A DNA stretch of 64,000 bases, from IMG/VR virus record IMGVR_UViG_3300031951_000003, positions 62,001-126,000 of that record; one strand, written 5' to 3'. Shown here in pieces: positions 2,782 to 26,806 of this stretch (positions are counted from its first letter, which is position 1; each line of letters begins with the position of its first letter). The notes beneath the pieces were generated by a model. It made no database searches and was not told the origin of the DNA. It worked only from the letters and a program-made list of their open reading frames with translations. The position numbers and the translations under genes were made by a program.

Positions 2782-3159
2782 TCAACAACACGCAGTTTCG
2801 GAAATGAAACTTGGTTGAATATTAATATAAAGTTGTTCTCTGATTGGAAGAATTAAATTTCCTTCATCATTTTTGATTAAGAATTGTCCTTCGTATCTTC
2901 CTGGCGTATCAGTATCTCTCGAAGTAAATTTGAAATAAATGTAGTATTCTGCAGGAGCACCAGGGTCCAAAATGAGATTAACTATTTCACATGGGGCTGA
3001 AACTATTTTTGGAATCCCAGTCTCATAATCTATCATAGTGAAATATATTGTGGAAACCTCCAACGCTTCCATAAACTGAATATACCCCGCTCTACCGTCT
3101 TTTACGACTTGCATTTTCAAAACTGGTAACGTAGCATTTTGTTTGATATAAAATTCCAT
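2782..3159 (-). CDS. Putative BppU-like baseplate/virion protein
   Basis: N-terminal FYIKQNATLPVL and C-terminal DTDTPGRYEGQF pattern resemble BppU N-terminal domains; TATTTATT upstream. Confidence 0.5.
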   Translation of the reverse strand: MEFYIKQNATLPVLKMQVVKDGRAGYIQFMEALEVSTIYFTMIDYETGIPKIVSAPCEIVNLILDPGAPAEYYIYFKFTSRDTDTPGRYEGQFLIKNDEGNLILPIREQLYINIQPSFISETACC

Positions 3160-3175
3160 AACAATAAATATATTG

Positions 3176-4849
3176 TTAGGACTCTTTACGTAACTCTCTG
3201 TTGTAATGTTCGAAACGGTCGTGTTCAGTTGGTGTCATTAGAAGTAAACCAGGATTTAATTTTTCTTCTTTTGTCAGTTGATACATATGACTCATCCACG
3301 TTTGTTCAAATGGATGTGCCCAAGTAACATCCAAAAACATTTTTTTGTTACCTGGTCTTGAAATAATTTGAGGCCAGTTACAATAATATATGTCGCCTGT
3401 CGCATATGGAACTTTTCTGTGTGAAAGAACTTTTTTGAACTCTGTCTTTGGCGCATTCGGGTCCAATCCTATTTGTGGTAATCTTGGATTTAAGGGCCAA
3501 TACTTTGACCTAACATCTTGAGGAACATTATACCAAGACCATTGAGTCCCGTTATCTCCGTAGAATTCAGAATAATTCAATTTTAAGAAATCAAAGTTTT
3601 CCTTTTGCATTATTTGCATCGAGATTGAAAATAGATTTGGTTCGTATCTTGAAAAACCGTTTTTACATTTCGAACCTTCATTCGGATAAAAAAACATGTC
3701 ATCTTCAAAAAACAAATAATAATCCAAATCTGTTTCTTCAAAATGTTCTGCAATCCACTGCCTTCCTCCACAAATACCCAAGTTATCTTTTTTGATATGT
3801 TCAAAATTATATTCATCACAAAGTTGTTTATACTCTTCTGTTGTTGACAAATCACTTGAGTTATCAAGTAAGAATTTTTTTGTTTTAAGTATGAATTCTT
3901 TATCATACATTAACATTGAATTAATCAACGTTTTGAATTGGTTTGGACTATTGAAAGTTATAACATATAGACCAACTTTGTTAATATCCAAATTTGAAAC
4001 TTGTCTATGAACTGATTCTGTTTTTACTTTCAAATCATCGTTCTTCAAATCCTCAAAAAATTTACCTAACAAACCATTTGATTCTATTTCAAAATAATTT
4101 ATTAACTCGGAGTGTCTATAACACATTATGCTGAATAAAGATTCTTCAGTTCCCATATATCCCGAATCCAAGGTTTCTTTCATCAGAGAATAATATATTG
4201 AATTGATTTCTGATATTGAGTGTTTTGGTCCACCGAAGAACCCACCTCTAGCAACCCTCTCAACTTTAGCACCTGCCATAGAGTTCATCTTATCGAAATT
4301 GAACCCGTGGACTTCTGTATTAGCTTCATAAGGAAAACAAACGAAACTGAATTTGGAGATATATTTTACTAATTTATCCAAAACCTTGTCGTGTGTAAAG
4401 TAACCAGGATGCACAGTATTTGTCAACCCACCGTCAATCCAAAACAGATATTCTGAATCAAACCTATCCATTATTTTTGCATCATTCAAAAGATAAACTT
4501 TTGACATAACCAACGGGTTATAGTTTTCCAATCTCGATTGAGTTGAATCTTTTAACCAACCAACTTGATTATACCACTCAGGGTTATTTCTTATGTTTTG
4601 GATTTTATCAAAAAATTCATTATTCCTGAACCAAGACATGTCTCTTACAATAAATTGTGTATTTGACTTATCCCTTTTTGAAAAAACAAATTCCTCTAAA
4701 CTTTTATCACCATAGATAATCATATTGGTATTGACATCCAATAGTTTTTCAAATTTATCCAAATAATGTTGAAAAGGTCTTGACCAACCTTCACTTAAAT
4801 CACCTCTTCCGATGTCCCAAATTCCTGTTACAAGTGTTATATTACTCAT
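3176..4849 (-). CDS. Two-domain glycosyltransferase (WlaTC/HtrL-like N-terminal domain plus GT-A-like C-terminal domain)
   Basis: TLVTGIWDIGR...FWIDGG typical of the HtrL family; second half VGLYVITFNSP...YYLFFEDD carries a DxD-like motif. Confidence 0.7.
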   Translation of the reverse strand: MSNITLVTGIWDIGRGDLSEGWSRPFQHYLDKFEKLLDVNTNMIIYGDKSLEEFVFSKRDKSNTQFIVRDMSWFRNNEFFDKIQNIRNNPEWYNQVGWLKDSTQSRLENYNPLVMSKVYLLNDAKIMDRFDSEYLFWIDGGLTNTVHPGYFTHDKVLDKLVKYISKFSFVCFPYEANTEVHGFNFDKMNSMAGAKVERVARGGFFGGPKHSISEINSIYYSLMKETLDSGYMGTEESLFSIMCYRHSELINYFEIESNGLLGKFFEDLKNDDLKVKTESVHRQVSNLDINKVGLYVITFNSPNQFKTLINSMLMYDKEFILKTKKFLLDNSSDLSTTEEYKQLCDEYNFEHIKKDNLGICGGRQWIAEHFEETDLDYYLFFEDDMFFYPNEGSKCKNGFSRYEPNLFSISMQIMQKENFDFLKLNYSEFYGDNGTQWSWYNVPQDVRSKYWPLNPRLPQIGLDPNAPKTEFKKVLSHRKVPYATGDIYYCNWPQIISRPGNKKMFLDVTWAHPFEQTWMSHMYQLTKEEKLNPGLLLMTPTEHDRFEHYNRELRKES

Positions 4850-5726
4850 AAATTCTTTTAAATTCTTCTAATATTTTATAGAAACTTTTATTTTTCTGAA
4901 ATAACTCATCTGTTACACCTTGAGGTGCATTATCCCTGCACCACCAAATATCAAAATGTTTTCTCTCAAATAACTCAATATGATTGAAATACATAAGAGT
5001 CATTATTTGTTCTTCATGAGGTAAACCCTCATCGTTAGATAAAACTTCTTGGACATAGTTTTCGAATATATTGACTATATTATCCCACTTGTCCCTGTGA
5101 CCACCAAACAATCCTCCTATGATATGAATACTTCTATCATAATTTTTATACCATCTTGGACTTACAGTTCCTGACCAATAGTTTCTTTCATTTTCTTTTC
5201 CTAAAATTAAAAATTTGTCTTTAGTGTCTTCTATCAAATTTTTCAAAAAATCATTATCAAACAAATTGCTTTCATAAAATCTTCTTAAGGCATGTTTTGT
5301 TTCAGTCAAATACTTGAGAGGTATTAAACCACAATGGGATAATCCCGCGTCTATCCAATAATAGTTATCGTAGGATTTATCCTCATTCCACCACCATGAA
5401 AATTTAGAATATTGTATTTCGATACATCTATCCCCTCTTTTAATCTCATCGACATTTTTTCTCGAATCAATTAAATGTTTAAACTTGGAATTTGAAATAT
5501 CGTATGTTGTAAATTTCAACTTGGATTCTGGTATATTGTTTTCTTCATAGAAAAATTTCTTTAGGGAATCTATTTCTCTATCCGAGGTATAACATAAAAA
5601 ATCCGCATCGGTCATCTTCAATAATGACAATAAACTATATCTATAGTGGGCACCTCTGTTAGGTCTACCACCAAATTCAGTTCCATAAAGGTCACTATAA
5701 ATTGCGGTTATAAACTTAGTTGACAT
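4842..5726 (-). CDS. WlaTC/HtrL-like glycosyltransferase
   Basis: KFITAIYSDL...YYWIDAGL...IIGGLFGG...HEEQIMT parallels the N-terminal domain of the adjacent 557-aa protein. Confidence 0.65.
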   Translation of the reverse strand: MSTKFITAIYSDLYGTEFGGRPNRGAHYRYSLLSLLKMTDADFLCYTSDREIDSLKKFFYEENNIPESKLKFTTYDISNSKFKHLIDSRKNVDEIKRGDRCIEIQYSKFSWWWNEDKSYDNYYWIDAGLSHCGLIPLKYLTETKHALRRFYESNLFDNDFLKNLIEDTKDKFLILGKENERNYWSGTVSPRWYKNYDRSIHIIGGLFGGHRDKWDNIVNIFENYVQEVLSNDEGLPHEEQIMTLMYFNHIELFERKHFDIWWCRDNAPQGVTDELFQKNKSFYKILEEFKRIYE

Positions 5727-6459
5727 TATAAGGTAAATATTTTTTTTCTGTTTTCATTTTTTTATTTTCTGATTCATTCAAAAATCTGTGATTAATCTTG
5801 ATTGGTGAATAGACATTCCAATTGTATGTTTGGGCGTAGAAATTGTTATACATTCCCTGCGACACATCAGAATAAGAATTTTTCTGAGGGGCAATTGGTA
5901 AGATTGGTGCATATGATTGAATTGAAGGATACACATGTTTTACCAATTGTTCATCAATAGGAATGATAAAATCACCACTATAAAAACACTTATCTTTAAT
6001 TTTTTCTATTTTTTCGAAAGATGATTCATCGTATATCAGAATATTTGTTGCGAAAGTTTCGGTCAATCTTTCATGTGGTTTTGGAGGTAAGTTTGTCAAA
6101 TCCAAAAGCATACTGTATTTTTCACTGACGTTCATTGGACGATTGAGTGTTGGAGAAAGATTCAATACACCAAAATCAATTCCATTTATATTTCTCTCCA
6201 AATCCTCAATGAAATTTTTTGCATAAGGCATAAATACACAATCATCTTCTATCACCATTACTCTCTTGTAACCTCTTTCTTTAGCCATTTCAATTATTGA
6301 CAAATGAGAAAGAGCACAACCCATATAATCGTTACGTGGAACAGCCTTAAACAAATCGTAATCCCAACCGATGTAATTCATCTCGAACTTTATATCTTCA
6401 AGTCTGTCAGGTCTACTTTCCAAATTTATAACAAATTTTGGTATGTCTTTGAAAATCAT
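5716..6459 (-). CDS. Glycosyltransferase family 25
   Basis: FVINLESRPDR, GCALSH...AKERGYKRVMVIEDD signature. Confidence 0.85.
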   Translation of the reverse strand: MIFKDIPKFVINLESRPDRLEDIKFEMNYIGWDYDLFKAVPRNDYMGCALSHLSIIEMAKERGYKRVMVIEDDCVFMPYAKNFIEDLERNINGIDFGVLNLSPTLNRPMNVSEKYSMLLDLTNLPPKPHERLTETFATNILIYDESSFEKIEKIKDKCFYSGDFIIPIDEQLVKHVYPSIQSYAPILPIAPQKNSYSDVSQGMYNNFYAQTYNWNVYSPIKINHRFLNESENKKMKTEKKYLPYNVN

Positions 6460-7733
6460 TAGCTTACAACATTATGATTTAATTGTCCAGTGATTCTATC
6501 ACACCATCCTTTTGATACCGAGTGAGGCCAAACAACCCAATATGTGGGAGTAACGTCCGTTTGAAATTCTCTCCAAATCTTACAATATTTGTCAGGGTCT
6601 CTCATATAACCAGCAATTTCATTTTTGTCGGAGTCCTTTCTGAATAAAGTTTCGTCGTTAGGTCCGTGGAAAGCCACAACCCAAAAATCATAATCCGTTT
6701 CAGGAACCTGTGAGTATCCAATATCTATACAATGTTTGAATACCTTAGCAAAATCATTTTTCCAATCTTCCTCTGATGAATAGTTATATGGGTTTGGAGG
6801 ATAATTCTTATCGAGTGTATATTTTTGAACAGCTCTCTTTTCAAATAAAATACCAGCATACTTCTCATATTCTCTTAAAGTTCTCACAGGACCAAAACCA
6901 TAAGGTCCATCATGACCCTCTTGGGTTTCACCATCCATACCAAAAAGTTTTCTGTTGGTCAAATGGGATACTTTGTTTTTCTCACCCCAAGTTTTGTCAT
7001 CATCCCATTGTTTTGTCCTACCCTTACGTGTGTATTCATGATAGACAACAGGAATGTGAGGGTGAAATAAATCATAACCCCATGTGTAAGCTCTAGCTGC
7101 AATTGAGATTTCTTCTCCGTGGAAGTAATATTCAGGATTGTGTTGGACTTCTAGAGAAAACTGACCCAAAGTAAAACAAAAATGTGCAGAATAAAATCTC
7201 GCTGTTACGGGTTTTGTCATCTCTCTCCAACCAGGAATTGTTTCAGGGAGAAAAAACACAGCACCCTCAGGAATGAATCTATCAAATGCCATTCTCCAAG
7301 CATCTTGTGCCCTTCCCGCTGGGTCATTTTCAGGGTCAAAGGAGGGCACATAACCCGTAAGTAGAGGTTTTTCATACCCATCCTTTTGTAGACCCTTAAT
7401 CATTTTTATTAATATTTCATCCCAATCCTTTACAAATCTCATGTGGGAATCAATTTGCATTGTGTATCCTTCACCATCGTAAAGTTGTTGGGTTAAGTTT
7501 CTTGCCCAACAAACGCCTCTAGATTCTTGATAAGGTATATCTAAAATCTTGAATCTTTTATCTTCTCTAAACTCATCTAAGTTGTCAAATCCATCTGTTT
7601 CACTAAATTGTCTTGCGATTGAGAAAACCAAGTTCTTTGGTTTTTTAGCGTTTGCAATCATATCTTTGAGTGTTGGAACTAACTGTGGGTCCCTGTATGA
7701 TGCGATTTGAATAAAAATTTTACTGTTAGACAT
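6459..7733 (-). CDS. GT60-like polypeptide/hydroxyproline alpha-N-acetylglucosaminyltransferase (GlcNAc family)
   Basis: IFIQIASYRDP, SRGVCWARNL, YTMQIDSHMRF..DWD and FHGEEISIAARAYTWGYDLFHP match the Skp1 Gnt1 / GT60 pattern. Confidence 0.8.
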   Translation of the reverse strand: MSNSKIFIQIASYRDPQLVPTLKDMIANAKKPKNLVFSIARQFSETDGFDNLDEFREDKRFKILDIPYQESRGVCWARNLTQQLYDGEGYTMQIDSHMRFVKDWDEILIKMIKGLQKDGYEKPLLTGYVPSFDPENDPAGRAQDAWRMAFDRFIPEGAVFFLPETIPGWREMTKPVTARFYSAHFCFTLGQFSLEVQHNPEYYFHGEEISIAARAYTWGYDLFHPHIPVVYHEYTRKGRTKQWDDDKTWGEKNKVSHLTNRKLFGMDGETQEGHDGPYGFGPVRTLREYEKYAGILFEKRAVQKYTLDKNYPPNPYNYSSEEDWKNDFAKVFKHCIDIGYSQVPETDYDFWVVAFHGPNDETLFRKDSDKNEIAGYMRDPDKYCKIWREFQTDVTPTYWVVWPHSVSKGWCDRITGQLNHNVVS

Positions 7734-7754
7734 ATTATCTTTTTGTCTAAAAAT

Positions 7755-7784
7755 AAAAAACCCTCCACGAAAGTAGAGGGTTTT
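7755..7784 (-). terminator. Rho-independent terminator after the 672-aa Thr-Pro protein
   Basis: Minus strand AAAACCCTCTAC-TTTC-GTGGAGGGTTTTTT. Confidence 0.75.
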
Positions 7785-7803
7785 ATCTTTATTATTTTTA
7801 AAT

Positions 7804-9822
7804 TTAATCTGTAAGTGTGATTTTTGCTACATCTGTATCTTGTAAAGGAACTCCACCACTAGTTAATCCAATCATTGATGGTGGGATTGTTGACCCTGAA
7901 TATAAGAACGACCCATTAAGTTCAACTATAAAATTAACAGGAGTTCCTGTTATAGAAGCTCTTGGATTACCGAATGTTAGACCGTGTAGTGCTGTAAAAG
8001 TTTGACCTGATGTTACAGGTAAAGCTCCTGATAGATTGGTAAGTGTTATACTTCCACCATCATCAACAAAATCTATAATTTCCGCTCCACCTGTTGATTC
8101 GTTAACCGCTATGATTTCGGGACAAATAAGAGTTCCTGTTATTTCACCGTTAGTTAATTCCCATCCGCCACCGCCAAGTAAGTTAAGCCATCCTGATGGA
8201 TAAATATCTGAGAAAGATGCCCCACTAAATATGATATCATTCGGATATGACGGTTGATTATAGTAATAAGAAGTTGTCGAAGTTCCTCCTGAACAAGCGT
8301 CCAATCCAGACACTGTTGAAAATTTAGTTGCACCAATTAATGCGAAAGTTCCTGGTGTTTCAGTAGGTGTTGGTGTGTATGTTGCAGTTTGAGATGGTGT
8401 TTGAGTTGGAGTTTCTGTGTTGGTTGGTGTTTGAGTTGGAGTTTCTGTGTTGGTTGGTGTTTGAGTTGTTGTTGGTGTTGGTGATGATATTGGTGTAGAT
8501 GTTGAAGTCACTGTAGGTGTCGGTGTCGGTAAGTTCGAACATCCGTTAGGGTCGGAACTTGTAATCAATCCTGCTCCACCGCTAACAATAAACCAAGCAA
8601 TCCCATTAGAATAATAACCATCAATAACAGGAACTGTCAGAGCTGTATTTTGATAAAGTGACTCACCAACGTTTGGACCTACTCCACCCGCTACAGTTCC
8701 GTAGACAGGATTAGTTGAACCCAAACAAGCTTCATTCGGAGTTGAACCTGAACCTAAATTATATGTATAGTATCCAAATGTTGCTGTTGGTGTTGTAGTT
8801 GGAGTCGGTGTTGGTGTTTCAGTTGGAGATGCGGTTACAGTTGCTGTTGGTGTTGGAACAACCAAACAAGAACTGAATGCACCCACTTGAGCACCATTCG
8901 AATCTATTTCTGTTACAATATTTGAACTGTTATAAAAACCTGCCAACATTGTTGACGGACCAAAACTTTCAGGATAGAATTGTGTGCAGTTATCGAAAAG
9001 AACCGCATTACCCCAAATATTTCCAACTATTCCTGAAGAACATGCTTCATTCTCAGTTGAACCTGAACCTACTGAAAACTCAAATCTTACTGGTGTCGGT
9101 GTAGGTGTTGGAGTTTGAGTTGGTGTTTCTGTGTTAGTTGGAGTTGGTGTAGGTGTTTGACTTGAAGTAGGAGTTGGTGTTGGACCACAATTTCCATCAA
9201 CTGTAATTGTAGCTCCCGTAATACAACCTGGTCCACAACCAGAAGCAACTATGTAAATAATACCATCTTCAGTATAATAACCTTCCGGATTACCTGTATT
9301 TGGACCTGTAGCATCTGACCAAACTAATGTTGAATCCGCCAAACTTGTTCCATTTACAAATATGTTTGCTGTTTGAACACAATCACAAGTTAGTAATATA
9401 TCCGTCTCATCGTGACATCTCACAATAGCAGTTCTCTCAACGTTTGTAGGTGTTGGAGTTTGCGTTGGAGTTTCCGTGTTAGTCGGAGTCTGTGTGAACG
9501 TTGGAGTATTTGTCGGTGTTTCTGACGCAGTTGGTGTCTGAGTATTGGTTGGTGTTGTTGTAGGCGTTGCAGTGTTCGAAGGTGTTTGAGTCGGACTAGA
9601 TGTCGGAGTAGGTGTGGGTCCAGTTGGTGGGAACGCACCCATATTTTGGAGAACGATTGTTGTATTCGCCGTGGAATATGTTCCATCTATCAACCAAATG
9701 TTTTTTACCTGATTTGGTTCTAATTCTACTTGGTAATCCCACATTGAATCTTCGCATCTTCTATAGTTGAAAGTTGCTATTGTGGAACCTGTGTTTGTTA
9801 AAATATATTTACTACAAGCCAT
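7804..9822 (-). CDS. Mucin-like Thr/Pro-repeat putative virion protein (672 aa)
   Basis: Several TPTPT/TETPT tracts separate Cys-bracketed globular modules; no signal peptide; TATTTATA at 9836-9843 (minus strand). Confidence 0.75.
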   Translation of the reverse strand: MACSKYILTNTGSTIATFNYRRCEDSMWDYQVELEPNQVKNIWLIDGTYSTANTTIVLQNMGAFPPTGPTPTPTSSPTQTPSNTATPTTTPTNTQTPTASETPTNTPTFTQTPTNTETPTQTPTPTNVERTAIVRCHDETDILLTCDCVQTANIFVNGTSLADSTLVWSDATGPNTGNPEGYYTEDGIIYIVASGCGPGCITGATITVDGNCGPTPTPTSSQTPTPTPTNTETPTQTPTPTPTPVRFEFSVGSGSTENEACSSGIVGNIWGNAVLFDNCTQFYPESFGPSTMLAGFYNSSNIVTEIDSNGAQVGAFSSCLVVPTPTATVTASPTETPTPTPTTTPTATFGYYTYNLGSGSTPNEACLGSTNPVYGTVAGGVGPNVGESLYQNTALTVPVIDGYYSNGIAWFIVSGGAGLITSSDPNGCSNLPTPTPTVTSTSTPISSPTPTTTQTPTNTETPTQTPTNTETPTQTPSQTATYTPTPTETPGTFALIGATKFSTVSGLDACSGGTSTTSYYYNQPSYPNDIIFSGASFSDIYPSGWLNLLGGGGWELTNGEITGTLICPEIIAVNESTGGAEIIDFVDDGGSITLTNLSGALPVTSGQTFTALHGLTFGNPRASITGTPVNFIVELNGSFLYSGSTIPPSMIGLTSGGVPLQDTDVAKITLTD
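8401..8460. repeat. Perfect 30-bp tandem repeat x2 encoding [10 protein letters not shown]
   Basis: ttgagttggagtttctgtgttggttggtgt repeated twice. Confidence 0.9.
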
Positions 9823-9873
9823 TTTACTTTTTTTATATAAATACTGAGAACTCGCTCAATTTTATTTTCTTTT

Positions 9874-10509
9874 TTAATAAATCTTATTCAGAACAAAAAT
9901 ATCACTGAAAATTGAGTTCAAAGGACTATTAGAACTAAACTGAGCAGTCACATTCAGAGTATTCGGAATAGTTGTATCAAAGGTTGTATCGTTTACAGTA
10001 TTGAACGCAAAACCTGCAGGAACACCACTTGATTGTTTTGTTGTATGAAATACTCCAAGAGATACAATATCGGCAACTCCAGCAACACCAAGAGTTCTAA
10101 TTGTAAAATTTATTGAGAACTGCCAAACATCGTCTGTCGCTGAACTCATAGTTTGTACACCACTGTCCGCCAACACAACTGAACCCGCCTTCACACGGAT
10201 TTGAATTGTGTCTCCATTTTTTGAAGACAATAACCCACCAAAATCCGCTCTAAAAGAATCCCCAATTTGAAATTGATTCGCACCAACGGTAAGAGTTCCA
10301 ACACCCCCATTGATTAAAGTCCCTTCAACAGTTGTTGCACTAATTGATACGCTATTTGCCGTTTGGGAAAATAATCCATAAACAGTTGGAAATGGTGCTA
10401 ATGTGCTATTTTTAACACGATAAGTTACTCCTCCTTGAGCAACTGCGAATTCAGCGTTGGCAGTCATCGCGGTTAATTCTGGTAATGCAGATATTGGTAA
10501 ATTAGGCAT
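9874..10509 (-). CDS. Putative virion/tail-associated protein
   Basis: N-terminal MPNLPISALPELT, seen in phage fibre-type proteins; beta-rich composition. Confidence 0.55.
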   Translation of the reverse strand: MPNLPISALPELTAMTANAEFAVAQGGVTYRVKNSTLAPFPTVYGLFSQTANSVSISATTVEGTLINGGVGTLTVGANQFQIGDSFRADFGGLLSSKNGDTIQIRVKAGSVVLADSGVQTMSSATDDVWQFSINFTIRTLGVAGVADIVSLGVFHTTKQSSGVPAGFAFNTVNDTTFDTTIPNTLNVTAQFSSNSPLNSIFSDIFVLNKIY

Positions 10510-10510
10510 A

Positions 10511-10786
10511 TTATGTAATTAAAATTTTGTAATTATCCTCTTGGTCAAGGGTTGAATAATCTTCTTGTAATAAATAGTTTGTATCGGGGTTAGAAATATA
10601 GGTATAACATGTTTGGTCAAAAGCCCCAAAATAAAGTTCATAACTTCCATTAAAATATTCCAACTCAACCGTATATGGTAACACATTTGCACCCAAGCTC
10701 ACAGTTCCTCCCGTATCAGGATAAAAGGTAATATTGGCTATCTGACCATTAAAATTCGTGCTTGATATTTGTACTCCTGTAGTCAT
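10511..10786 (-). CDS. Small putative virion protein
   Basis: Lies in the operon between structural-type genes; C-terminal YLLQED motif. Confidence 0.55.
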   Translation of the reverse strand: MTTGVQISSTNFNGQIANITFYPDTGGTVSLGANVLPYTVELEYFNGSYELYFGAFDQTCYTYISNPDTNYLLQEDYSTLDQEDNYKILIT

Positions 10787-10787
10787 T

Positions 10788-13700
10788 TTATAATAGTGGT
10801 ATATTCCATTTATTTGATAGATATTGTTGGACAGATTGTAACTCCGATGGAGATAAAGCTCTACTGTAAGCTAACACATCAAACAAAAATCCATTATAGA
10901 AGAACTGTGTGGTTCCCGCGGGTGCTCCCGTATAGGATACTCCCAAGAACACATAATCAAGAAGTGCATTTGTTGTTGTTCCAACATTAGTTATATAGGT
11001 CAAGGTTTGTCCTGAACCATCAATATAAAACTTTAATTTATCTTGATTGGTCACACCTGTTCCACTAAACACATAAGATATAATGTGTGGATTTGTATTA
11101 ACAACACCACCCGTAGCAAAACCACCACCAGCCGCAATGTTGTATGTTGAACCACTTTGTCTTATGTATGTTGCATCCAACCCTGTATTTCCATCAGAAC
11201 CTCCCTGAATATATTGAGCCGTATTAGTTGAATTGAGTGTCTTAACAACCATAATGATTGTTTGTCCTGATTTTGATGATAAGTCAACAAGAGGGTTTAC
11301 ACTTAAACCATCTGAGGTTCCATTGAACCAAACTCCTCCTAAACCATTTTGAACACCGCTCCACCATTCAGGAGAAGGACCAGCTCCACCACCAATTGGG
11401 TTGGCATTGTGCGCACTTGCAGATGAATCTTCCCATTGTGTAAATGTCGAACCACTTGTTGCATTAGGGTTAAATTGGTCACCAGTCTGACCTTGATAAT
11501 AAATTTCAAGGGTTGGGTCACTTGGTACAATCGCTTGAGTTGGTGTAGGTGTTACATCTGGTGTGTTGGTTTGTGTTGGAGTACTTGTTACCTCAGGTGT
11601 TGGTGTTTGAGTTGGAGTTTCAGTAGGTGTTGGACTTGGTTCATTTGTTGGTGTTGGTGTCTGAGTTGACGAAGGAGTAGGTGTTGGTAGTAAGGTTATT
11701 TGAATATCACAAACAGGATTAGGTGTTACATCAGGTGTTGGTGTTTGAGTTGGAGTTTCAGTATTAGTAGGAGTATTAGTAGGTGTATCTGTGATTGTTG
11801 GAGTTGTAGTATTAGTAGGAGTATTAGTAGGTGTATCTGTAATTGTTGGAGTTGTAGTATTAGTAGGAGTATTAGTAGGTGTATCTGTAATTGTTGGAGT
11901 AGGCGTAGATGTAGAAGTATCGGTTATGGTTGGTGTTACAGTATTAGTAGGTGTTTGAGTTGGAGACTCAGTTGGCGTATTTGTAGGAGTTTCAGTTGGA
12001 GTGTTAGTAGGAGTTTCTGTTGGTGTTTGGGTTACGGTTTCTATCGGGGTTCCTGTTGGAGTGTTAGTAGGAGTTTCTGTTGGAGTCTCAGTTTGAGTTG
12101 GTGTCTCAGTCGGAGTGTTAGTAGGAGTCTCTGTAGGAGTTCCGGTGTTAGTTGGAGTTTGTGTTATGGTTTCTGTTGGAGTCTCAGTAGGAGTTTGTGT
12201 TGGTGTCTCAGTTTGAGTTGGGGTATTTGTTGGGGTTTCACTCGGAGTTTGTGTTGGCGTCTCACTCGGAGTCTGTGTAACCGTTGATGTTGGTGTTGTT
12301 GTAGGACATATTGAGAAACTACCAATTGTGAACCCCTCTGAATCAAGTTCAACCACAATGTTATTATATGAATAATATCCAGAAAGATTAACCGTGTTTG
12401 AACCCGTAGGAGAATCAAAGAATTGATTATTCTCATCGAAGTTCTCAAACTCACCATATATAATTCCATTATCAACACATTGACATGCATCAATCAAAGT
12501 AGTTCCCGAACAAACATTAAACGCGAATCTCAATTTCGTCGGTGTTGGAGTGTTGGTAGGTGTTTCGGTTGGAGTTTCAGTTGGTGTCTCCGAAGGTGTG
12601 GATGTAGGAGTTGATGTTTCTGTAGGAGTATTTGTTGGTGTCTCGGTAGGTGTAGGTGTTTGAGTTTCAGTTGCAGTTGGAGTTTGACCAGGACTTGCAG
12701 TAATTGAAGGTGTAGGAGTATTTGTTGGGGTTTCTGATGGCGTAACGGTTGGTGTTTCCGTACTTGTTGGTGTCAAGGTTGGTGTTTCCGAAGCGGTAAT
12801 CGAAGGTGTTGGTGTTACAGTAGGAGTTACTGTAGGTGAAGGTGTTGGTAAAATTAAAACTCTACAGTCAGGACACTTAGGGTCTAACAAATCATATTTG
12901 TCTTTTTGAATTTTGAAATTGTGCCAAATCTGTGAAGCATTTAAAGGCTCTGTATACATTCTAAATGCACTAATGTCCCCAATTAAACTGCCACCAAAAT
13001 ATTCTTCAAGTTTGATGTGTGTTGTTAAACCTGAATAGATTGTGTTGTCCAAATCATGTGTTGTTAAACACTCTGGGTCTTGTTGATAAACTATTTCGTC
13101 AACAGTTTCAGGACATCCTCCTGAGAATGTAAGGTTGTCGTGTAATCCCTGTGTTCCACCACCAACAGAAATGTTATAAGAAACGCCTATTTGTTTTTCT
13201 CTTGGTGTGTCTAAAAGTCTCGGAATAATCTCTTCAAAGTTTTCAACAACCATGAAAAGTCTACCATTTACGTATAACTTGAATTTACCCAAACGGTATA
13301 TTTGTTCAAGTGTCCAATTGTCATTAAAAGTTACAATTTCAGTTGTTGCCGGGTCATAATCTTTCTCATGGGTTAGAGGAGGTTCAATAAGACTAACACT
13401 ATTGTGAGCAGGAGTAGCGGTATAGATTGTTTCTGTTATCAAACCTAATCCCCCTTTTTCATATAAATCACAAGTATCAAACCATTCATTTCTTTCAAAA
13501 ACAGCATCTATTTGTACCCAATGCTCAAGCTTTGAATAATCAGTTTGTTCACAATCATGGAAGATACCCCTTGTTGAACACCATTCATTTACTGTAACAC
13601 CAGTAACATAAGTTAAACCCGACAGGCATGCACCTGTAAATTCACAATCCCCTGTAATTCTATATGTTTTAACACACAGTCTTGGATTACCAGTGTCCCC

Positions 13701-14717
13701 ACTCAATCTCAAAGAAAGTGCATTTGACACTCCGTCATATAGTGGGTCTAGCTCAGGATACTTGACAGTTGTTTCACAATTACACGGACAACCACAGGAG
13801 CAATTTGTTGATGTTCCTCCCGATTGTTGATAAACTTTCATACAAGAATGTTCAGCGGTAATTCCCGTCAGTAGACATTCGCAGGTATGCATACAAGTCA
13901 ACCCAGATGTAACTCTTGTGTAACCTGTATCTTGTTTTGGGTGTCCGTCCGCATAATGATAAAATTTGTTTTCGGCTCTCGCACCCATGTAGAAGAATGC
14001 CCCTTTATTTTCAGGGTATCTTTTATTCAAACCTACATTTGTATCACCAGTCCATCTATAACGTAACATAACCTCAGTTGTCCAACCCCAATGAGGTCTT
14101 TGAGGGAATACTTGATAGGTATAACCTGGTAACTTATAGAATCCTTGGTAAAATCCTCCATTCAATCTGGCAAAATTTCCTACTAAATCACCATAACTGT
14201 CATACGATAAATCGTAGGTATATGAATCATCATTCCAAAGACGGTTACTTGTTGTTGTAAAACCTGTGATAGGATGAAGTTTCATTCTCCTATCATATTT
14301 GTATCTTGAAAACTTGTCGGATATGTTTGTATATAGACCAGTCGTTATCTCAATTGTTTCACCCGACATTCTTTTTACTAAACCATTATCAATACCCGTA
14401 AGACCAACATCACAAAGAGTTTGTGCTGATGGACAAAAATTTGGGTCGAGGTTGTCTGGGTTCCAGTAGTTTTCGGATACTATGGTATCAAAATCAAATG
14501 TTACCGCAGAGACTGTCGCAACAGTTGTCCCTGTCGAATTAAATTCAAATTTAAAAGGCATTCTATTACCGTCATCATCACCAATTAATAATGGTGAAAA
14601 AATTACCTCTTGGTCAAAGGTTTTTTCGTCTGACGCAAGACAAATATCCGTTATTTCATTAACAGGTAATAGGCCTAACCTTCTAAAATTGTATTGATTA
14701 ATATTCTGATACGACAT
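10788..14717 (-). CDS. Large mucin-like putative virion protein (1309 aa) with LamG/ConA-like domains and long Thr-Pro tracts
   Basis: [22 protein letters not shown] and [28 protein letters not shown] are LamG-type C-terminal patterns; hundreds of residues of TP repeats in the middle; TATTTATC upstream. Confidence 0.8.
11761..11904. repeat. 48-bp tandem repeat x3 encoding [16 protein letters not shown]
   Basis: Unit gtattagtaggagtattagtaggtgtatctgt(g/a)attgttggagttgta starting at 11761, 11809 and 11857. Confidence 0.9.
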
Positions 14718-17414: not shown

Positions 17415-18626
17415 ATGCCCAAAATTAACGTATTAGTTGTCCCATCAGATAGAACAGGTGTTGGCAAATTTAGGTCTGTAGACCCTCACATTTTTCTACA
17501 AAATTTATATCCTGAAGAGTTTCATGTCGATATTATATATGAAGTTCCGTATAACGATGATTCTTTTTGGAAGAAATACCAAATAGTTGCGTTCCATAGA
17601 AGTTTAGGTGCTGATTTCGAAAAAGCCTATGAATTGATTCCGAGATTGAAATCAATGGGAATTAAAACAATATGTGACATCGATGACTATTGGATGCCAG
17701 GTAAGGAACACCCAATCCACGATGTAATAAGATTCAACAAAATAAATGAGAAAATTACAAACAATCTCAAAGTCGCCGAATTTGTTACAACAACTACCTC
17801 AATATTTGCAGACGAAATAAAAAAATTGAACAAAAACGTTTTCGTTTTTCCAAACGCAATTAACCCAACAGAATCACAATTTAAGGAACCAACACCTGAA
17901 TCAGACAGATTACGAGTAGGTTGGCTTGGAGGTTCTTCTCATCTACACGACCTACAGTTGTTAGACCAATCATTCAGTAAGTTATCTAAACTTTCAGACA
18001 AACTACAGTTTGTAATTTGTGGATTTGACACAAGAGGAACAATAACTGAAATCAACCAACAAACAGGAGAACATAAAAAAAGAAACATATTACCACACGA
18101 AACTGTTTGGGCTAATTACGAAAAAATATTCACACAAGATTTCTCTATTGTATCCGAAGAATATAAAAATTATCTTTTGAAATACTCTCAAGAATCTTAC
18201 CCTGAAGAAAACAAAGAATCATATATCAGAGTCTGGACCAAACCAGTTCAGTCATATGCAAAAAACTATTCAAAGTTCGACATATCTTTAGCACCAATTA
18301 AAAATCATATGTTCAACAGAATGAAATCTCAACTTAAAGTAATTGAGGCTGGTTTTTACAAAAAAGCAATAATTGCTTCTAACTTAGGTCCTTATACAAT
18401 AGATTTAAAACACGCTTTAAAAAATGGAGAATTTACAGACGGTAATGCTCTTTTAGTTGAAGAAAATAGAAATCATTCAGATTGGGCTAAGTTTATAGAA
18501 AAATTAGAAAAAAATAGAAATTGGGTTACCGATTTAGGTGAAAGGTTGTATGAAACCGTGAAGGACAAATATGATTTGAACATAGTCACCAAACATAGAG
18601 CAGAGTTTTATAAATCTATATTATGA
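17415..18626 (+). CDS. GT-B (GT4-like) glycosyltransferase
   Basis: DIDDYW, VGWLGGSSH and DISLAPI...KSQLKVIEAG...IIASNLGPY are typical of phage GT4-like enzymes. Confidence 0.8.
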   Translation: MPKINVLVVPSDRTGVGKFRSVDPHIFLQNLYPEEFHVDIIYEVPYNDDSFWKKYQIVAFHRSLGADFEKAYELIPRLKSMGIKTICDIDDYWMPGKEHPIHDVIRFNKINEKITNNLKVAEFVTTTTSIFADEIKKLNKNVFVFPNAINPTESQFKEPTPESDRLRVGWLGGSSHLHDLQLLDQSFSKLSKLSDKLQFVICGFDTRGTITEINQQTGEHKKRNILPHETVWANYEKIFTQDFSIVSEEYKNYLLKYSQESYPEENKESYIRVWTKPVQSYAKNYSKFDISLAPIKNHMFNRMKSQLKVIEAGFYKKAIIASNLGPYTIDLKHALKNGEFTDGNALLVEENRNHSDWAKFIEKLEKNRNWVTDLGERLYETVKDKYDLNIVTKHRAEFYKSIL

Positions 18627-19324
18627 TAAACATTCCACTTAGTAAGATTCTTTTTTTAGATATCGAAACCGTTGGAGTCCAACCCAATTGGGATTCCTTG
18701 GTAAAAAACCAACCAGCGTTGTCTTTCCAATTTGAAAACTATTTTGATTGGTTTCAAAAAAGATTCCCAGAAGATGCGGACAAACCAATCGGTGATATGT
18801 TCGTCAATAGAGCGGCACTTGTCCCTGAGTTTGCAAGAATTGCATGTATAAGTGTTGCATTTGTGACCGAACAAGGTAACACACGAATGCAATCTTTCAG
18901 TGACCCTGATGAGAAAAAGATATTATTTGAAGTTCAGAAACTTTTACAAAAAGTTGGGGAGTTAGGTTTTTTTCTTTGTGGACATAATGTAAAAGGTTTT
19001 GACATTCCAATGTTGGCTAAAAGAATGATTATAAACGGTTTTCAACCACCAAAGATATTACCAGGACACGATACGAAACCTTGGGAAATAAAGGCTTTTG
19101 ACACTAAGGAATTTTGGCAATACGGTGGCTATGGCTCAATTGCATCCTTGGAACTTATGTGTGTATGTTTGGGTGTAGAATCTTCGAAGACCATGGAAAT
19201 TACAGGTAATAAGGTTCATGACGCTTTTTGGGTAAAAAAAGATATTGAAGGTATTGTAAAATATTGTGAGAAAGATGTGTCTGTATTAATTGATGTAATT
19301 AAAAAAATTCAAAAACTTAAATAA
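18623..19324 (+). CDS. PolB-like 3'-5' exonuclease (DEDD)
   Basis: FLDIETV, GHNVKGFDIP and YCEKDV motifs. Confidence 0.85.
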   Translation: MINIPLSKILFLDIETVGVQPNWDSLVKNQPALSFQFENYFDWFQKRFPEDADKPIGDMFVNRAALVPEFARIACISVAFVTEQGNTRMQSFSDPDEKKILFEVQKLLQKVGELGFFLCGHNVKGFDIPMLAKRMIINGFQPPKILPGHDTKPWEIKAFDTKEFWQYGGYGSIASLELMCVCLGVESSKTMEITGNKVHDAFWVKKDIEGIVKYCEKDVSVLIDVIKKIQKLK

Positions 19325-19325
19325 C

Positions 19326-19931: not shown

Positions 19932-19941
19932 ATTTTTGATA

Positions 19942-23091: not shown

Positions 23092-23092
23092 A

Positions 23093-25153: not shown

Positions 25154-25156
25154 AAA

Positions 25157-26805: not shown

Positions 26806-26806
26806 T

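What the first reader, a model, noticed from the sequence alone, without database searches (positions are those of the whole stretch)
3176..14717. Candidate phage-encoded mucin-type O-glycosylation system: GT60 initiator next to Thr-Pro mucin-like virion proteins
Seen: on the minus strand, two very large Thr/Pro-repeat proteins (1309 and 672 aa) are followed by a GT60-like transferase (6459-7733), a GT25 and two HtrL-like transferases; none has a signal peptide or membrane segment. Known: GT60 enzymes add alpha-GlcNAc directly to protein hydroxyls (Dictyostelium cytosolic Skp1 Gnt1 on hydroxyproline; Trypanosoma cruzi OGNT on mucin Thr) and are related to GT27 polypeptide GalNAc-transferases that start animal mucin glycans. 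Bacteroidota general O-glycosylation is extracytoplasmic and targets D-(S/T)-X, so it would not reach cytoplasm-assembled TPTPT tracts. Inference: the phage primes its own virion TP linkers with GlcNAc and extends them, building a mucin-like glycocalyx on the particle that could stiffen the linkers, resist proteases or mediate adhesion.
Basis: partly seen in the sequence, partly recalled or inferred. Interest (0 to 1): 0.92.

Follow-up and report, generated by a model that had tools for sequence, protein, structure and literature searches.

The report
Phage sugar-adding genes beside Thr-Pro proteins
A giant freshwater phage carries a conserved set of sugar-transferring enzymes, led by a relative of the enzymes that start mucin glycans in animals, directly next to long Thr-Pro-repeat proteins; it probably sugar-coats parts of its own particle, but nobody has tested this.

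Summary
On the minus strand lie two real, conserved Thr/Pro-repeat proteins (1309 and 672 aa), then a four-gene glycosyltransferase operon. This is PF11397/GT60 (224 bits), GT25, a distant HtrL-like protein, and a two-domain HtrL plus GT-A protein. All are soluble and acidic.

The window belongs to a ~321 kb T4-like jumbo phage of an abundant freshwater lineage. The AlphaFold model of the GT60 (pLDDT 94.5) matches animal and Toxoplasma polypeptide GalNAc-transferases (GT27) best, and the DxH, GEE and His motifs are invariant.

The same module occurs in Xanthomonas phage XacN1, whose virions contain Schiff-positive glycoproteins and whose DNA is cut by restriction enzymes. All four isolate phages with the module have (S/T)P linkers in a giant post-baseplate protein. 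A relative without it has none.

In close relatives a Thr-Pro gene sits directly upstream of GT60 in 37 of 40 alleles. This adjacency fades in diverged lineages (3 of 27).

The acceptor, the sugar and the virion location of the Thr-Pro proteins remain inferred. I rate phage-encoded O-glycosylation of virion Thr-Pro tracts as the best explanation (about 0.5). It is a new variant of known phage and giant-virus virion glycosylation.

The parts
10788..14717 (-). Thr-Pro protein 1 (1309 aa). It has a conserved N-terminal 619-aa domain, a Thr-Pro tract (620-731), a 66-aa Cys-bearing module, long Thr-Pro tracts (798-1069) and a C-terminal LamG-like domain. It is the candidate acceptor and a fibre-like protein.
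   Evidence: The N-terminus is 65-80% conserved while total length varies from 720 to 1496 aa, and relatives carry PF13385 in the distal part. A TATTTAT motif lies at 14727-14733, upstream of the start.
10511..10786 (-). Small acidic protein (91 aa) between the fibre-like genes. Function unknown.
   Evidence: Homologues at 35-79% identity sit in the same position in relatives.
9874..10509 (-). 211-aa protein, T/S-rich, with no family hit. It may be a fibre or adaptor component.
   Evidence: It is conserved in only some relatives.
7804..9822 (-). Thr-Pro protein 2 (672 aa). Five small globular modules are joined by four Thr-Pro linkers of 36-71 aa.
   Evidence: TATTTATA lies at 9836-9843, 14 nt upstream of the start. 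Number and length of such genes are hypervariable among relatives.
7757..7784 (-). Intrinsic-terminator-like hairpin (12-bp stem plus a T run) between the Thr-Pro gene and GT60.
6459..7733 (-). GT60-type (PF11397) GT-A glycosyltransferase, 424 aa. The catalytic domain is residues 1-304 with D95-x-H97, G206-E-E208 and H232. Residues 305-424 form a beta-rich C-terminal domain. It is the proposed initiating polypeptide HexNAc-transferase.
   Evidence: It is 85-90% identical across relatives whose neighbouring genes are 40-80% identical.
5716..6459 (-). GT25-family glycosyltransferase (247 aa, EDD at residue 71). Proposed extending enzyme. This slot is replaced by other tailoring genes in some relatives.
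4842..5726 (-). 294-aa protein, distantly HtrL-like (GGLFGG motif at 204). Probable glycosyltransferase.
   Evidence: It is 31% identical to XacN1 ORF332.
3176..4849 (-). 557-aa two-domain enzyme. The N-terminal domain is HtrL_YibB-like. The C-terminal domain is GT-A-like (EDD at 382), with sub-threshold similarity to DNA glucosyltransferase families.
   Evidence: It is 41% identical to XacN1 ORF330 and is paired with GT60 in many bacterial genomes.
2782..3159 (-). 125-aa protein. In other lineages this domain is the N-terminus of large Thr-Pro-rich proteins lying just downstream of the GT cluster.
   Evidence: A TATTTAT motif lies at 3164-3170.
17415..27907 (+). Second glycan cluster, a possible partner of the first. 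It holds a GT4-like gene, a GT2_5+GT4 fusion, GT2, an FkbM methyltransferase, GT11 and GT10 fucosyltransferase-like genes, two TylF-like methyltransferases, a GMER-like epimerase and a GDP-mannose 4,6-dehydratase. An exonuclease and a dUTPase lie inside the span at 18623-19931.
55168..56178 (-). Third Thr-Pro protein (336 aa; a 139-aa Thr-Pro tract between two small Cys-bearing modules). It lies within the head/neck/packaging module.
   Evidence: TATTTATA lies at 56191-56198.

Best explanation
The four soluble enzymes at 3176-7733 form a phage-encoded, cytoplasmic protein O-glycosylation module. The second cluster at 17415-27907 supplies GDP-fucose, fucosyltransferases and O-methyltransferases and may act with it.

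Proposed mechanism:
1. The GT60-type enzyme, a GT-A transferase of the DxH/Mn type related to GT27, transfers a first HexNAc from a UDP-sugar onto Thr hydroxyls in the long Thr-Pro tracts of the phage's own fibre-like proteins. These are the 1309-, 672- and 336-aa proteins. If a prolyl hydroxylase is encoded elsewhere in the genome, hydroxyproline is an alternative acceptor.
2. The GT25, the HtrL-like enzyme and the two-domain HtrL/GT-A enzyme extend the glycan.
3. Lineage-specific tailoring enzymes cap it by methyl, fucosyl or carbamoyl transfer.

The result would be a mucin-like, variable glycan coat on extended linkers of virion appendages.

Shown here: the identities and folds of the enzymes, their solubility, the conservation and synteny of the module, the variability of the tailoring slot, and virion glycoproteins in one cultured phage with the module.

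Inferred: the acceptor (Thr-Pro tracts), the sugar, the virion location of the Thr-Pro proteins, and any benefit such as stiffness, protease resistance, adhesion or masking.
For: Enzyme identity:
- PF11397 at 224 bits.
- D95-x-H97, G206-E-E208 and H232 are invariant in 39 homologues of 35-89% identity.
- The AF2 model has pLDDT 94.5. Its top 21 PDB matches are all GT27 polypeptide GalNAc-transferases, with E 3.5e-10 to 1.8e-8.

Protein-directed relatives:
- From my own knowledge, the three characterised GT60 activities all modify protein hydroxyls. Two act on Thr in Thr/Pro-rich mucin-like repeats: the T. cruzi OGNT and the Dictyostelium Golgi pp-alphaGlcNAc-T2.
- Bacterial relatives fuse 3-4 PF11397 domains to P4H-type 2OG-Fe(II) oxygenase domains.

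Synteny:
- A Thr-Pro ORF ends within 600 nt upstream of GT60 in 37 of 40 close alleles. All 21 loci with 5 kb of upstream sequence have one. None of 47 loci has one in the 10 kb downstream.
- In some lineages Thr-Pro genes flank the cluster on both sides.

Conservation pattern:
- GT60 is 85-90% conserved while the Thr-Pro genes vary in number and length.
- Tailoring genes are swapped between lineages: FkbM methyltransferase, GT10, an RMNT-like methyltransferase, a TylF fusion and a carbamoyltransferase. This is expected for a surface-exposed glycan.

Cultured relatives:
- XacN1 and Xoo-sp13 carry the module (GT60 49%, 294-aa protein 31%, 557-aa protein 41%), convergent on the baseplate-wedge genes and a 3313-aa protein.
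- XacN1 virions show at least two Schiff-stained protein bands. The authors attributed them to ORF328/ORF334, and ORF334 is the GT60 homologue (PMC5852040).
- (S/T)P linkers are present in the giant protein of XacN1, Xoo-sp13 and RAS14. They are absent in RsoM2USA, which lacks GT60.

Late-gene signal:
- The Thr-Pro genes share the TATTTATA-type motif with the portal, protease and other head genes. There are 16 copies against 6.25 expected.

Localisation:
- None of the enzymes or Thr-Pro proteins in 2782-14717 has a signal peptide or membrane segment, and no multi-pass membrane proteins occur in the window, though four other proteins there have one or two hydrophobic windows and the third Thr-Pro protein has one at residues 1-19.
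- All the enzymes are acidic, pI 5.6-5.9.
Against: - There is no direct evidence for any acceptor.
- The virion location of the Thr-Pro proteins is inferred only. They have no PHROG or Pfam structural annotation. The AF2 model of the N-terminal domain failed at pLDDT 41, and its fold search gave nothing significant.
- Adjacency is lineage-bound: 12 of 19 alleles at 70-80% GT60 identity and 3 of 27 below 70%. The GC-0.30 jumbo lineage has no Thr-Pro ORF within 10 kb.
- The GT operon follows a strong terminator and lacks the late-type motif, so co-expression is unproven.
- DNA polymerase lies next to the module here and near it in XacN1.
- The C-terminal domain of the 557-aa protein has weak, sub-threshold hits to DNA glucosyltransferase families: PF20691 at 16.8 bits against a cut-off of 27.5, and phrog_842 at 7e-5.
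- Bacterial homologues sit in heterogeneous contexts that name no acceptor: a T6SS cluster, and a small island beside an IS element.
- The isolate comparison has few independent lineages. (S/T)P linkers are also common in Xanthomonas-type secreted proteins.
- The XacN1 stained bands were not identified.
Confidence: 0.5

Rival explanations
1. The module does glycosylate phage proteins, but the acceptors are not the Thr-Pro tracts. They could be the capsid, the tail tube or sheath, globular fibre domains, or C-terminal tails as in mycobacteriophages. On this view the Thr-Pro tracts are ordinary unmodified extended linkers, and the adjacency is inherited synteny.
For: - Adjacency decays with divergence, and a whole lineage keeps the enzymes without nearby Thr-Pro genes.
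- In mycobacteriophages the glycans are on the C-termini of the capsid and tail-tube subunits (as summarised in PMC12619734).
- The XacN1 glycoprotein bands were not identified.
- A terminator separates the Thr-Pro gene from GT60.
Against: - GT60 and GT27 relatives characteristically act on Thr/Pro-rich unstructured repeats (my own knowledge; the structural similarity is).
- Linkers are present in GT60-positive isolates and absent in the GT60-negative one.
- The Thr-Pro tract is retained in all 120 homologues of the 1309-aa protein.
Confidence: 0.15
2. The enzymes build or modify a non-protein glycoconjugate during infection. Candidates are host LPS core or O-antigen, capsule or another envelope glycan (to block superinfection or change the receptor), or a soluble or lipid-linked oligosaccharide or small molecule.
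For: - The GT25 and HtrL_YibB families are annotated from LPS-core loci.
- The second cluster resembles O-antigen toolkits, with GMD, GMER, fucosyltransferases and methyltransferases.
- GT60+HtrL pairs occur in many bacterial chromosomes with no obvious protein partner.
- The GT operon lacks the late-type motif.
Against: - The window has no polyprenyl-phosphate priming transferase, flippase, polymerase or any multi-pass membrane protein.
- All the enzymes are soluble.
- The nearest structures to GT60 are polypeptide transferases.
- Relatives are fused to P4H-type domains.
- XacN1 virions contain glycoproteins.
Confidence: 0.2
3. The module hypermodifies phage DNA by glycosylating a hydroxylated pyrimidine, as in T-even phages, TET-associated systems and arabinosyl-5hoC phages, to evade restriction.
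For: - Multi-sugar DNA glycans made by several phage glycosyltransferases are now known (bioRxiv 10.1101/2023.12.21.572611 and PMC13326640).
- The C-terminal domain of the 557-aa protein has weak TAGT and phrog_842 hits.
- The module lies next to DNA polymerase here and near it in XacN1.
- A dUTPase and an exonuclease are embedded in the second cluster.
Against: - None of the ORFs of 220 aa or more in the window that were scanned is a thymidylate-synthase-like hydroxylase or hydroxymethylase, a 5mYOX/TET or a C5-methyltransferase.
- XacN1 DNA was mapped by digestion with BssHII, NaeI and SpeI, which argues against bulk base glycosylation in a phage carrying the module.
- All the enzymes are acidic, with net charge -4 to -12.
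- The TAGT hit is below the curated cut-off.
- Methyl, fucosyl and carbamoyl tailoring is unknown for DNA glycans.
Confidence: 0.07

Closest known systems
CAZy GT60 / Pfam PF11397: Dictyostelium and Toxoplasma Skp1 Gnt1, T. cruzi OGNT, Dictyostelium pp-alphaGlcNAc-T2
   Same: - The HMM match is far above threshold.
- It has a GT-A fold with DxH, GEE and a distal His.
- It is soluble like Gnt1.
- It lies next to Thr/Pro-rich repeats like those modified by OGNT and pp-alphaGlcNAc-T2 (acceptor preferences from my own knowledge).
   Different: - It is encoded by a phage and would act in a bacterial cytoplasm.
- It carries an extra 120-aa beta-rich C-terminal domain.
- It heads an operon with GT25 and HtrL-type enzymes.
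- Its activity, sugar and acceptor are untested.
- No prolyl hydroxylase was found in the window.
GT27 polypeptide GalNAc-transferases (initiation of mucin-type O-glycosylation)
   Same: - They are the best structural matches: the top 21 PDB hits, with probability 1.00.
- They share the DxH/His metal-site logic and a GEE motif resembling the Gal/GalNAc-T motif (motif comparison from my own knowledge).
- Their presumed acceptors are dense Thr/Pro tracts.
   Different: - Sequence identity is only 8-17%.
- There is no ricin-type lectin domain and no PF00652 hit.
- There is no membrane anchor and no secretory pathway.
- It is not a member of the family. The relationship is analogy plus distant homology.
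XacN1-type Xanthomonas and Stenotrophomonas jumbo phages (XacN1 ORF330-334)
   Same: - They have a homologous GT60, 294-aa-like and 557-aa-like module.
- The module lies next to baseplate and giant fibre-like genes with (S/T)P linkers.
- XacN1 virions hold Schiff-positive proteins, which the authors attributed to the phage glycosyltransferases.
   Different: - Identity is only 31-49%.
- A carbamoyltransferase is inserted.
- The linkers are short (24-50 aa) rather than hundreds of residues.
- The hosts are Gammaproteobacteria.
- The authors did not recognise the GT60/GT27 relationship or propose the linkers as acceptors.
Mycobacteriophage virion glycosylation (Freeman et al. 2023, as cited in PMC12619734)
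   Same: Phage-encoded glycosyltransferases, with methyltransferases, decorate virion proteins made in the cytoplasm.
   Different: - The reported sites are the C-termini of the capsid and tail-tube subunits, not long Thr-Pro repeats.
- Homology of the enzymes was not tested here.
- The host is an actinobacterium.
Chlorovirus and giant-virus self-encoded glycosylation
   Same: - The virus encodes its own nucleotide-sugar synthesis (GMD and GMER here), plus many glycosyltransferases and sugar methyltransferases.
- PF11397-type enzymes exist in Megaviridae and Pandoravirus.
   Different: Those are eukaryotic viruses. Chlorovirus glycans are N-linked to the capsid protein (my own knowledge).
Phage DNA glycosyltransferase systems (T4 alpha/beta-GT, TAGT, arabinosyl-5hoC)
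   Same: They are soluble phage glycosyltransferases, sometimes several acting in series.
   Different: - No hydroxypyrimidine-forming enzyme is nearby.
- Similarity is sub-threshold only.
- The enzymes are acidic.
- XacN1 DNA can be cut by restriction enzymes.

Membership tests
GT60 / PF11397 | Match to the family HMM above the curated threshold | tested here: met
   224.1 bits against a cut-off of 21, E 4.6e-66. phrog_24687 at 547 bits.
GT60 / PF11397 | GT-A fold with a DxH metal motif, a downstream His and a GEE-type motif | tested here: met
   D95, H97, E207, E208 and H232 are invariant in 39 sequences. AF2 pLDDT is 94.5.
GT60 / PF11397 | Transfers alpha-GlcNAc from UDP-GlcNAc to a polypeptide Thr, Ser or Hyp hydroxyl | not testable with these tools
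   This needs an enzyme assay or glycoproteomics. The only indirect evidence is the P4H fusions in relatives and the XacN1 glycoproteins.
GT27 polypeptide GalNAc-transferase | Catalytic domain structurally like the ppGalNAc-Ts | tested here: met
   The top 21 Foldseek PDB hits are GalNAc-T1, T2, T4 and TgGalNAc-T3; T10, T12, T7 and PGANT9 appear lower in the top 50. E ranges from 3.5e-10 to 1.8e-8.
GT27 polypeptide GalNAc-transferase | C-terminal ricin-type lectin domain and a type II membrane anchor | tested here: not met
   PF11397 is the only Pfam hit. No hydrophobic segment was found. The C-terminal domain is a beta-rich module of about 120 aa with six strands and one helix.
Phage-encoded virion protein glycosylation (mycobacteriophage type) | Phage-encoded glycosyltransferases and methyltransferases beside structural genes | tested here: met
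Phage-encoded virion protein glycosylation (mycobacteriophage type) | Glycans demonstrated on virion proteins | tested here: inconclusive
   This is shown only for the distant relative XacN1, by Schiff staining of unidentified bands. There are no data for this lineage.
Phage DNA glycosylation | A hydroxylated-pyrimidine pathway (ThyA-like hydroxylase or hydroxymethylase, or C5-MT plus 5mYOX) encoded with the glycosyltransferases | tested here: inconclusive
   None was found among the window ORFs scanned. About 80% of the ~321 kb genome was not available.
Phage DNA glycosylation | Homology to known DNA glycosyltransferases | tested here: not met
   There are only sub-threshold hits in the C-terminal domain of the 557-aa protein: PF20691 at 16.8 bits against a cut-off of 27.5, and phrog_842 at E 7e-5 over 58 residues.
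Phage DNA glycosylation | Virion DNA refractory to restriction enzymes | tested here: not met
   XacN1, which carries the homologous module, had its DNA mapped with BssHII, NaeI and SpeI digests. This was not tested for this lineage.
Bacterial LPS / O-antigen type glycan pathway | A polyprenyl-phosphate priming transferase, a flippase or polymerase, and membrane-associated steps | tested here: not met
   No such Pfam families were found in the cluster genes. No multi-pass membrane protein occurs in the window.

The most novel reading that the evidence does not exclude
An abundant lineage of freshwater jumbo phages, and the XacN1-like phages, runs a complete mucin-type O-glycosylation pathway inside the bacterial cytoplasm. 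A GT60/GT27-like polypeptide HexNAc-transferase densely primes hundreds of Thr residues in hypervariable Thr-Pro-repeat fibres. A swappable set of extending, fucosylating, methylating and carbamoylating enzymes then builds a lineage-specific 'phage mucin' coat. This would be the first mucin-like glycocalyx on a bacterial virus. It would also be a prokaryotic-virus branch of the enzyme clan that initiates mucin glycans in eukaryotes.
Probability: 0.4. Interest if true: 0.85.

Novelty: new variant of a known kind. Interest (0 to 1): 0.68.

Why it matters
Virion protein glycosylation by phage-encoded enzymes has been demonstrated in only a few phages. If this reading is right, it is widespread in nature. 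More than 7,000 clusters (90% identity) of this GT60 exist in public metagenomes, with the top 120 at 75% identity or more.

It would use an enzyme clan so far known to modify proteins mainly in eukaryotes. That gives a tractable, soluble, bacterial-cytoplasm model for dense Thr O-glycosylation of mucin-like repeats. It would explain why jumbo phages carry large glycan toolkits. It would also point to glycan-coated, length-variable fibres as a factor in adsorption, particle stability and antigenic diversity.

It offers enzymes for making mucin-like glycopeptides in E. coli. The pairing of GT60 with P4H-type oxygenases in bacteria also suggests that Skp1-like Hyp or Thr glycosylation chemistry has unexplored prokaryotic roots.

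Tried and rejected
- **DNA-level search against isolate phages.** The first 25 kb gave no match.
- **Sequence search of GT60 against PDB.** No hit, so a structure prediction was needed.
- **The 1309-aa protein and its neighbour.**
  - The N-terminal domain gave no tblastn hit in isolate phages.
  - The N-terminal domain and the 211-aa protein gave no PDB sequence hit. The C-terminal 240 aa gave only one chance-level match, E 0.84.
  - The AF2 model from 23 homologues was poor (pLDDT 40.8).
  - Its fold search gave only non-significant matches (E above 0.03, TM below 0.2) to generic lectin-like jelly-roll domains of unrelated proteins. I treat these as meaningless.
- **Prolyl 4-hydroxylase in the window.** A small HMM built from the bacterial fusion proteins found nothing. 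Sensitivity was limited, and the rest of the genome was unavailable.
- **Literature searches.** 'GT60 + phage', 'polypeptide GalNAc-transferase + bacteriophage', and Thr-Pro linker glycosylation in phage fibres returned nothing relevant. The Freeman 2023 paper is not held.
- **The 'moraphage' paper (PMC12619734).** It mentions core glycosyltransferases only in general terms.
- **Bacterial contexts of GT60 homologues.**
  - They were heterogeneous and named no acceptor: a T6SS cluster in a Neisseriaceae genome, and an IS-flanked island in Tepidamorphus.
  - Detecting Thr-Pro tracts in high-GC bacterial loci was too noisy to use.
- **Lipoprotein reading of the 336-aa protein.** I rejected it. 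The N-terminal hydrophobic stretch repeats the start of its second module and has no charged n-region.
- **T4-type TATAAATA late promoters.** This was superseded. The recurrent motif is TATTTATA on the coding strand.

Full report
**1. What is in the sequence**

The minus strand between 2782 and 14717 carries nine tightly packed genes. In order of transcription they are:
- a 1309-aa protein;
- 91- and 211-aa proteins;
- a 672-aa protein;
- a strong terminator-like hairpin at 7757-7784;
- four overlapping or abutting enzyme genes at 6459-7733, 5716-6459, 4842-5726 and 3176-4849;
- a 125-aa protein.

The two large proteins are about 20% Thr and 10% Pro, against 3-5% Thr and 2-6.5% Pro in the enzymes. 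Their Thr-Pro tracts total 593 residues, with T 41%, P 22% and 113 TP dipeptides. Imperfect tandem repeats of period 12-54 nt encode the tracts. Near-perfect recent duplications are present, for example 48 nt x 3.2 at 97%.

The tracts act as linkers between small Cys-bearing modules of 60-77 aa. In the 1309-aa protein they join a conserved 619-aa N-terminal domain to a LamG-like C-terminus. Relatives carry PF13385 in that distal part.

The enzyme assignments are:
- 6459-7733: PF11397 'GlcNAc' (GT60), 224 bits;
- 5716-6459: GT25, 48.5 bits;
- 3176-4849: an N-terminal HtrL_YibB domain (E 1.9e-21) plus a second GT-A-like domain with an EDD motif;
- 4842-5726: no family hit, but it aligns with the HtrL domain at equivalent positions (E 2e-4, GGxFGG motif).

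None of these proteins has a hydrophobic segment or a signal-like N-terminus in a Kyte-Doolittle scan.

**2. What the window is**

The window encodes a gp23-type major capsid protein, a portal, a large terminase, a prohead protease, PhoH and a dUTPase. The GT60 gene is 100% identical to genes on IMG/VR contigs of 317-321 kb. This is a T4-like jumbo phage.

It has no DNA-level relative among 50,697 isolate phage records. Its capsid protein is closest to an uncultured 484 kb phage, Microcystis phage Mel-JY01, Flavobacterium 'immuto' phages and Rhodothermus RM378.

The lineage is very abundant. More than 7,000 clusters (90% identity) match the GT60, with the top 120 at 75% identity or more. More than 6,300 match the 557-aa enzyme.

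The host is not established. The closest 'cellular' GT60 hits (58-71%) are MAG contigs labelled Saprospiraceae, Lewinellaceae, Cytophagaceae and Chitinophagia. This fits a Bacteroidota host but could reflect mis-binned phage contigs.

**3. The enzyme**

An alignment of 39 homologues (35-89% identity) has invariant D95, H97, E207, E208 and H232. That gives a DxH motif, a GEE motif and a distal His. From my own knowledge, this is the metal-site logic of the GT27/GT60 clan.

AlphaFold2 gives a confident model (pLDDT 94.5, pTM 0.89). Foldseek against the PDB returns polypeptide GalNAc-transferases (GalNAc-T4, T2, T1 and Toxoplasma GalNAc-T3) as the top 21 hits, with E from 3.5e-10 to 1.8e-8; T10, T12 and T7 appear lower in the top 50. 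Wall-teichoic-acid and other GT2-type enzymes follow. GT27 is heavily represented in the PDB, so the ranking is suggestive rather than decisive.

There is no PDB hit at sequence level. Residues 305-424 form an extra beta-rich domain that is conserved in part of the family. It is not a ricin-type lectin by Pfam.

PF11397-type enzymes also occur in other uncultured tailed phages, Megaviridae and Pandoravirus.

Among 4,441 representatives (50% identity clusters) are bacterial giants with three or four PF11397 domains fused to P4H-type 2OG-Fe(II) oxygenase and AhpC domains. One of them lies on an ordinary bacterial chromosome. This fusion links the family to peptidyl-proline hydroxylation chemistry, as in the Skp1 pathway. 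No P4H-like ORF was found in this window.

**4. Comparative evidence for a link to Thr-Pro proteins**

Among unique GT60 alleles from IMG/VR loci, the adjacency depends on divergence:

| GT60 identity to the window | Thr-Pro ORF ending within 600 nt upstream, same strand |
|---|---|
| 80% or more | 37 of 40 |
| 70-80% | 12 of 19 |
| below 70% | 3 of 27 |

For the closest group, all 21 loci with 5 kb of upstream sequence have a Thr-Pro ORF there. None of 47 has one in the 10 kb downstream.

A GC-0.30 jumbo lineage with contigs up to 333 kb keeps GT60, a GT25-like gene and a TylF-HtrL fusion. It has no Thr-Pro ORF within 10 kb. In other lineages the 125-aa domain downstream of the cluster is the N-terminus of very large Thr-Pro proteins, so Thr-Pro genes flank the enzymes on both sides.

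Within the close group, GT60 is 85-90% identical. GT25 is 47-78%, the 294-aa protein 60-81% and the 557-aa protein 66-78%. The Thr-Pro genes vary in number (one to five) and in length.

All 120 best homologues of the 1309-aa protein keep a Thr-Pro tract starting at residue 616-686. Its length ranges from 27 to 430 residues, and the distal domains differ. This is the pattern of a conserved anchor with a variable distal, receptor-facing part.

The slot between GT60 and the HtrL enzyme is exchangeable. It holds GT25 here. Elsewhere it holds an FkbM methyltransferase, a GT10 and an RMNT-like methyltransferase, and in XacN1 a NodU/CmcH-type carbamoyltransferase. Swappable capping chemistry is what one expects of a surface-exposed glycan.

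**5. Cultured relatives**

Only four isolate phages have a GT60 homologue: Xanthomonas XacN1 and Xoo-sp13, and Stenotrophomonas CM1 and RAS14.
- XacN1 and Xoo-sp13 carry GT60 (49%), a carbamoyltransferase, a homologue of the 294-aa protein (31%), ORF331, and a homologue of the 557-aa protein (41%). The module converges on the baseplate-wedge genes and a 3313-aa protein.
- That giant protein has two C-terminal (S/T)P linkers in XacN1 and in Xoo-sp13, and one in RAS14. The homologue in Ralstonia phage RsoM2USA, which has no GT60, has none. This is only about two independent lineages against one.
- The XacN1 paper reports at least two Schiff-positive protein bands in purified virions. It attributes them to the phage glycosyltransferases ORF328 and ORF334, and ORF334 is the GT60 homologue. 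The bands were not identified (PMC5852040).
- The same paper mapped the genome with BssHII, NaeI and SpeI digests. This argues against bulk glycosylation of its DNA.

**6. Expression signals**

A motif TATTTATA occurs 16 times against 6.25 expected, and none of 100 shuffles reached 16. It sits 5-35 nt upstream of the starts of the portal gene, the 525-aa and 107-aa head-module genes, the 336-aa and 672-aa Thr-Pro proteins, and others. Relaxed TATTTAT copies precede the protease gene, the 1309-aa protein and the 125-aa protein.

The Thr-Pro genes therefore belong to the same promoter class as head genes, which supports a late, structural role. The GT operon lacks the motif and follows the terminator. 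Its timing is unknown.

**7. Weighing the explanations**

*Protein glycosylation of virion components is the best fit.* The supporting points are:
- the enzyme clan;
- the P4H fusions;
- the solubility of the enzymes;
- the XacN1 glycoproteins;
- the exchangeable tailoring slot;
- a second cluster in the window that supplies GDP-fucose synthesis, two fucosyltransferase-like enzymes and three methyltransferases. From my own knowledge, this parallels chloroviruses.

*That the Thr-Pro tracts are the acceptor is a further inference.* It rests on the known preference of GT60 and GT27 enzymes for Thr/Pro-rich unstructured repeats, on the adjacency, and on the isolate comparison. I put the full statement at about 0.5.

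*The rivals:*
- **Glycosylation of other virion proteins (0.15).** The decay of adjacency with divergence favours this.
- **A non-protein envelope or small-molecule acceptor (0.2).** The GT25 and HtrL annotations and the heterogeneous bacterial contexts favour it. The absence of any priming transferase, flippase, polymerase or multi-pass membrane protein counts against it.
- **DNA hypermodification (0.07).**
  - For: weak sub-threshold hits of one domain, and the neighbouring DNA polymerase.
  - Against: no hydroxypyrimidine pathway in the window, acidic enzymes with pI 5.6-5.9, and restriction-sensitive XacN1 DNA.

**8. Comparison with what is known, and novelty**

The protein is a member of PF11397/GT60 by sequence and motif criteria. 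It is not a GT27 member, because it has no lectin domain or membrane anchor and only 8-17% identity. It may nevertheless work like one.

Phage-encoded virion glycosylation is established for mycobacteriophages (cited). It was hinted at for XacN1 in 2018.

The new elements here are:
- recognition that the conserved lead enzyme belongs to the mucin-initiating clan;
- its systematic pairing with hypervariable Thr-Pro-repeat fibre-like proteins;
- the exchangeable tailoring cassette;
- the very wide environmental distribution.

I found no paper making this connection. I class it as a new variant of a known kind, with interest 0.68. The hypothesis is plausible, is testable with cheap experiments, and would be notable if true. 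It remains unproven, and its key correlation is partly lineage-bound.

Noticed in passing
window 17415-27907 (+): A second, larger glycan gene cluster. It holds a GT4-like gene, a GT2_5+GT4 fusion, GT2, an FkbM methyltransferase, GT11- and GT10-type fucosyltransferase-like genes, two TylF-like O-methyltransferases, a GMER-like epimerase and a GDP-mannose 4,6-dehydratase. A 3'-5' exonuclease and a dUTPase are embedded at 18623-19931.
   Followed up: partly
window 55168-56178 (-): A third Thr-Pro protein (336 aa, with a 139-aa Thr-Pro tract between two small Cys-bearing modules). It lies inside the head/neck/packaging module and is preceded by the TATTTATA motif.
   Followed up: partly
window-wide, e.g. 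9836-9843, 44783-44790, 45150-45157, 49482-49489, 56191-56198, 63374-63381 (all minus strand): A promoter-like motif TATTTATA occurs 16 times against 6.25 expected. It lies 5-35 nt upstream of many structural-gene starts. It differs from the T4 late consensus TATAAATA.
   Followed up: partly
window 41335-43146 (-): The gp23-like major capsid protein is 603 aa. Its relatives align to only 53-59% of it, in two pieces, which suggests a lineage-specific insertion domain.
   Followed up: no
window 58795-60810 (+): A 671-aa AAA+ protein matches phrog_4871 'ATP-dependent protease' at 819 bits, which is unusual cargo for a phage.
   Followed up: no
P0122, P0123, P0125; L154 10001-17386: Bacterial giant proteins (1641-2461 aa) carry three or four PF11397 domains fused to P4H-type 2OG-Fe(II) oxygenase and AhpC/TSA domains. 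One sits on an ordinary chromosome between housekeeping genes. This may be a prokaryotic hydroxylation-plus-glycosylation system.
   Followed up: partly
L190 8001-9365; L180 7971-12560: A full-length GT60 homologue (40% identity) lies inside a type VI secretion gene cluster (TssF, TssG, TssA, DotU, OmpA-like) of a Neisseriaceae genome. In Tepidamorphus, a GT60 plus HtrL-like mini-island lies near a DDE transposase gene (about 1.1 kb beyond the island).
   Followed up: partly
L158, L162, L164 (MAG contigs); P0079: The closest 'cellular' GT60 hits (58-71% identity) are on MAG contigs labelled Saprospiraceae, Lewinellaceae and Cytophagaceae. A 77%-identical copy is on a 100 kb contig named Candidatus Elulimicrobium humile. 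These are either host hints or phage contigs binned into MAGs.
   Followed up: no
window 2782-3159 (-); L102 15521-21232, L153 7721-10564: The 125-aa protein downstream of the enzymes is homologous to the N-terminal domain of very large Thr-Pro-rich proteins in other lineages. It may be a remnant or a stand-alone anchor module.
   Followed up: partly
L004 15049-17781 (just beyond the window's left end): A family-B DNA polymerase gene follows the 125-aa gene on the same strand. In XacN1 the DNA polymerase lies about 5 kb upstream of the GT60.
   Followed up: no
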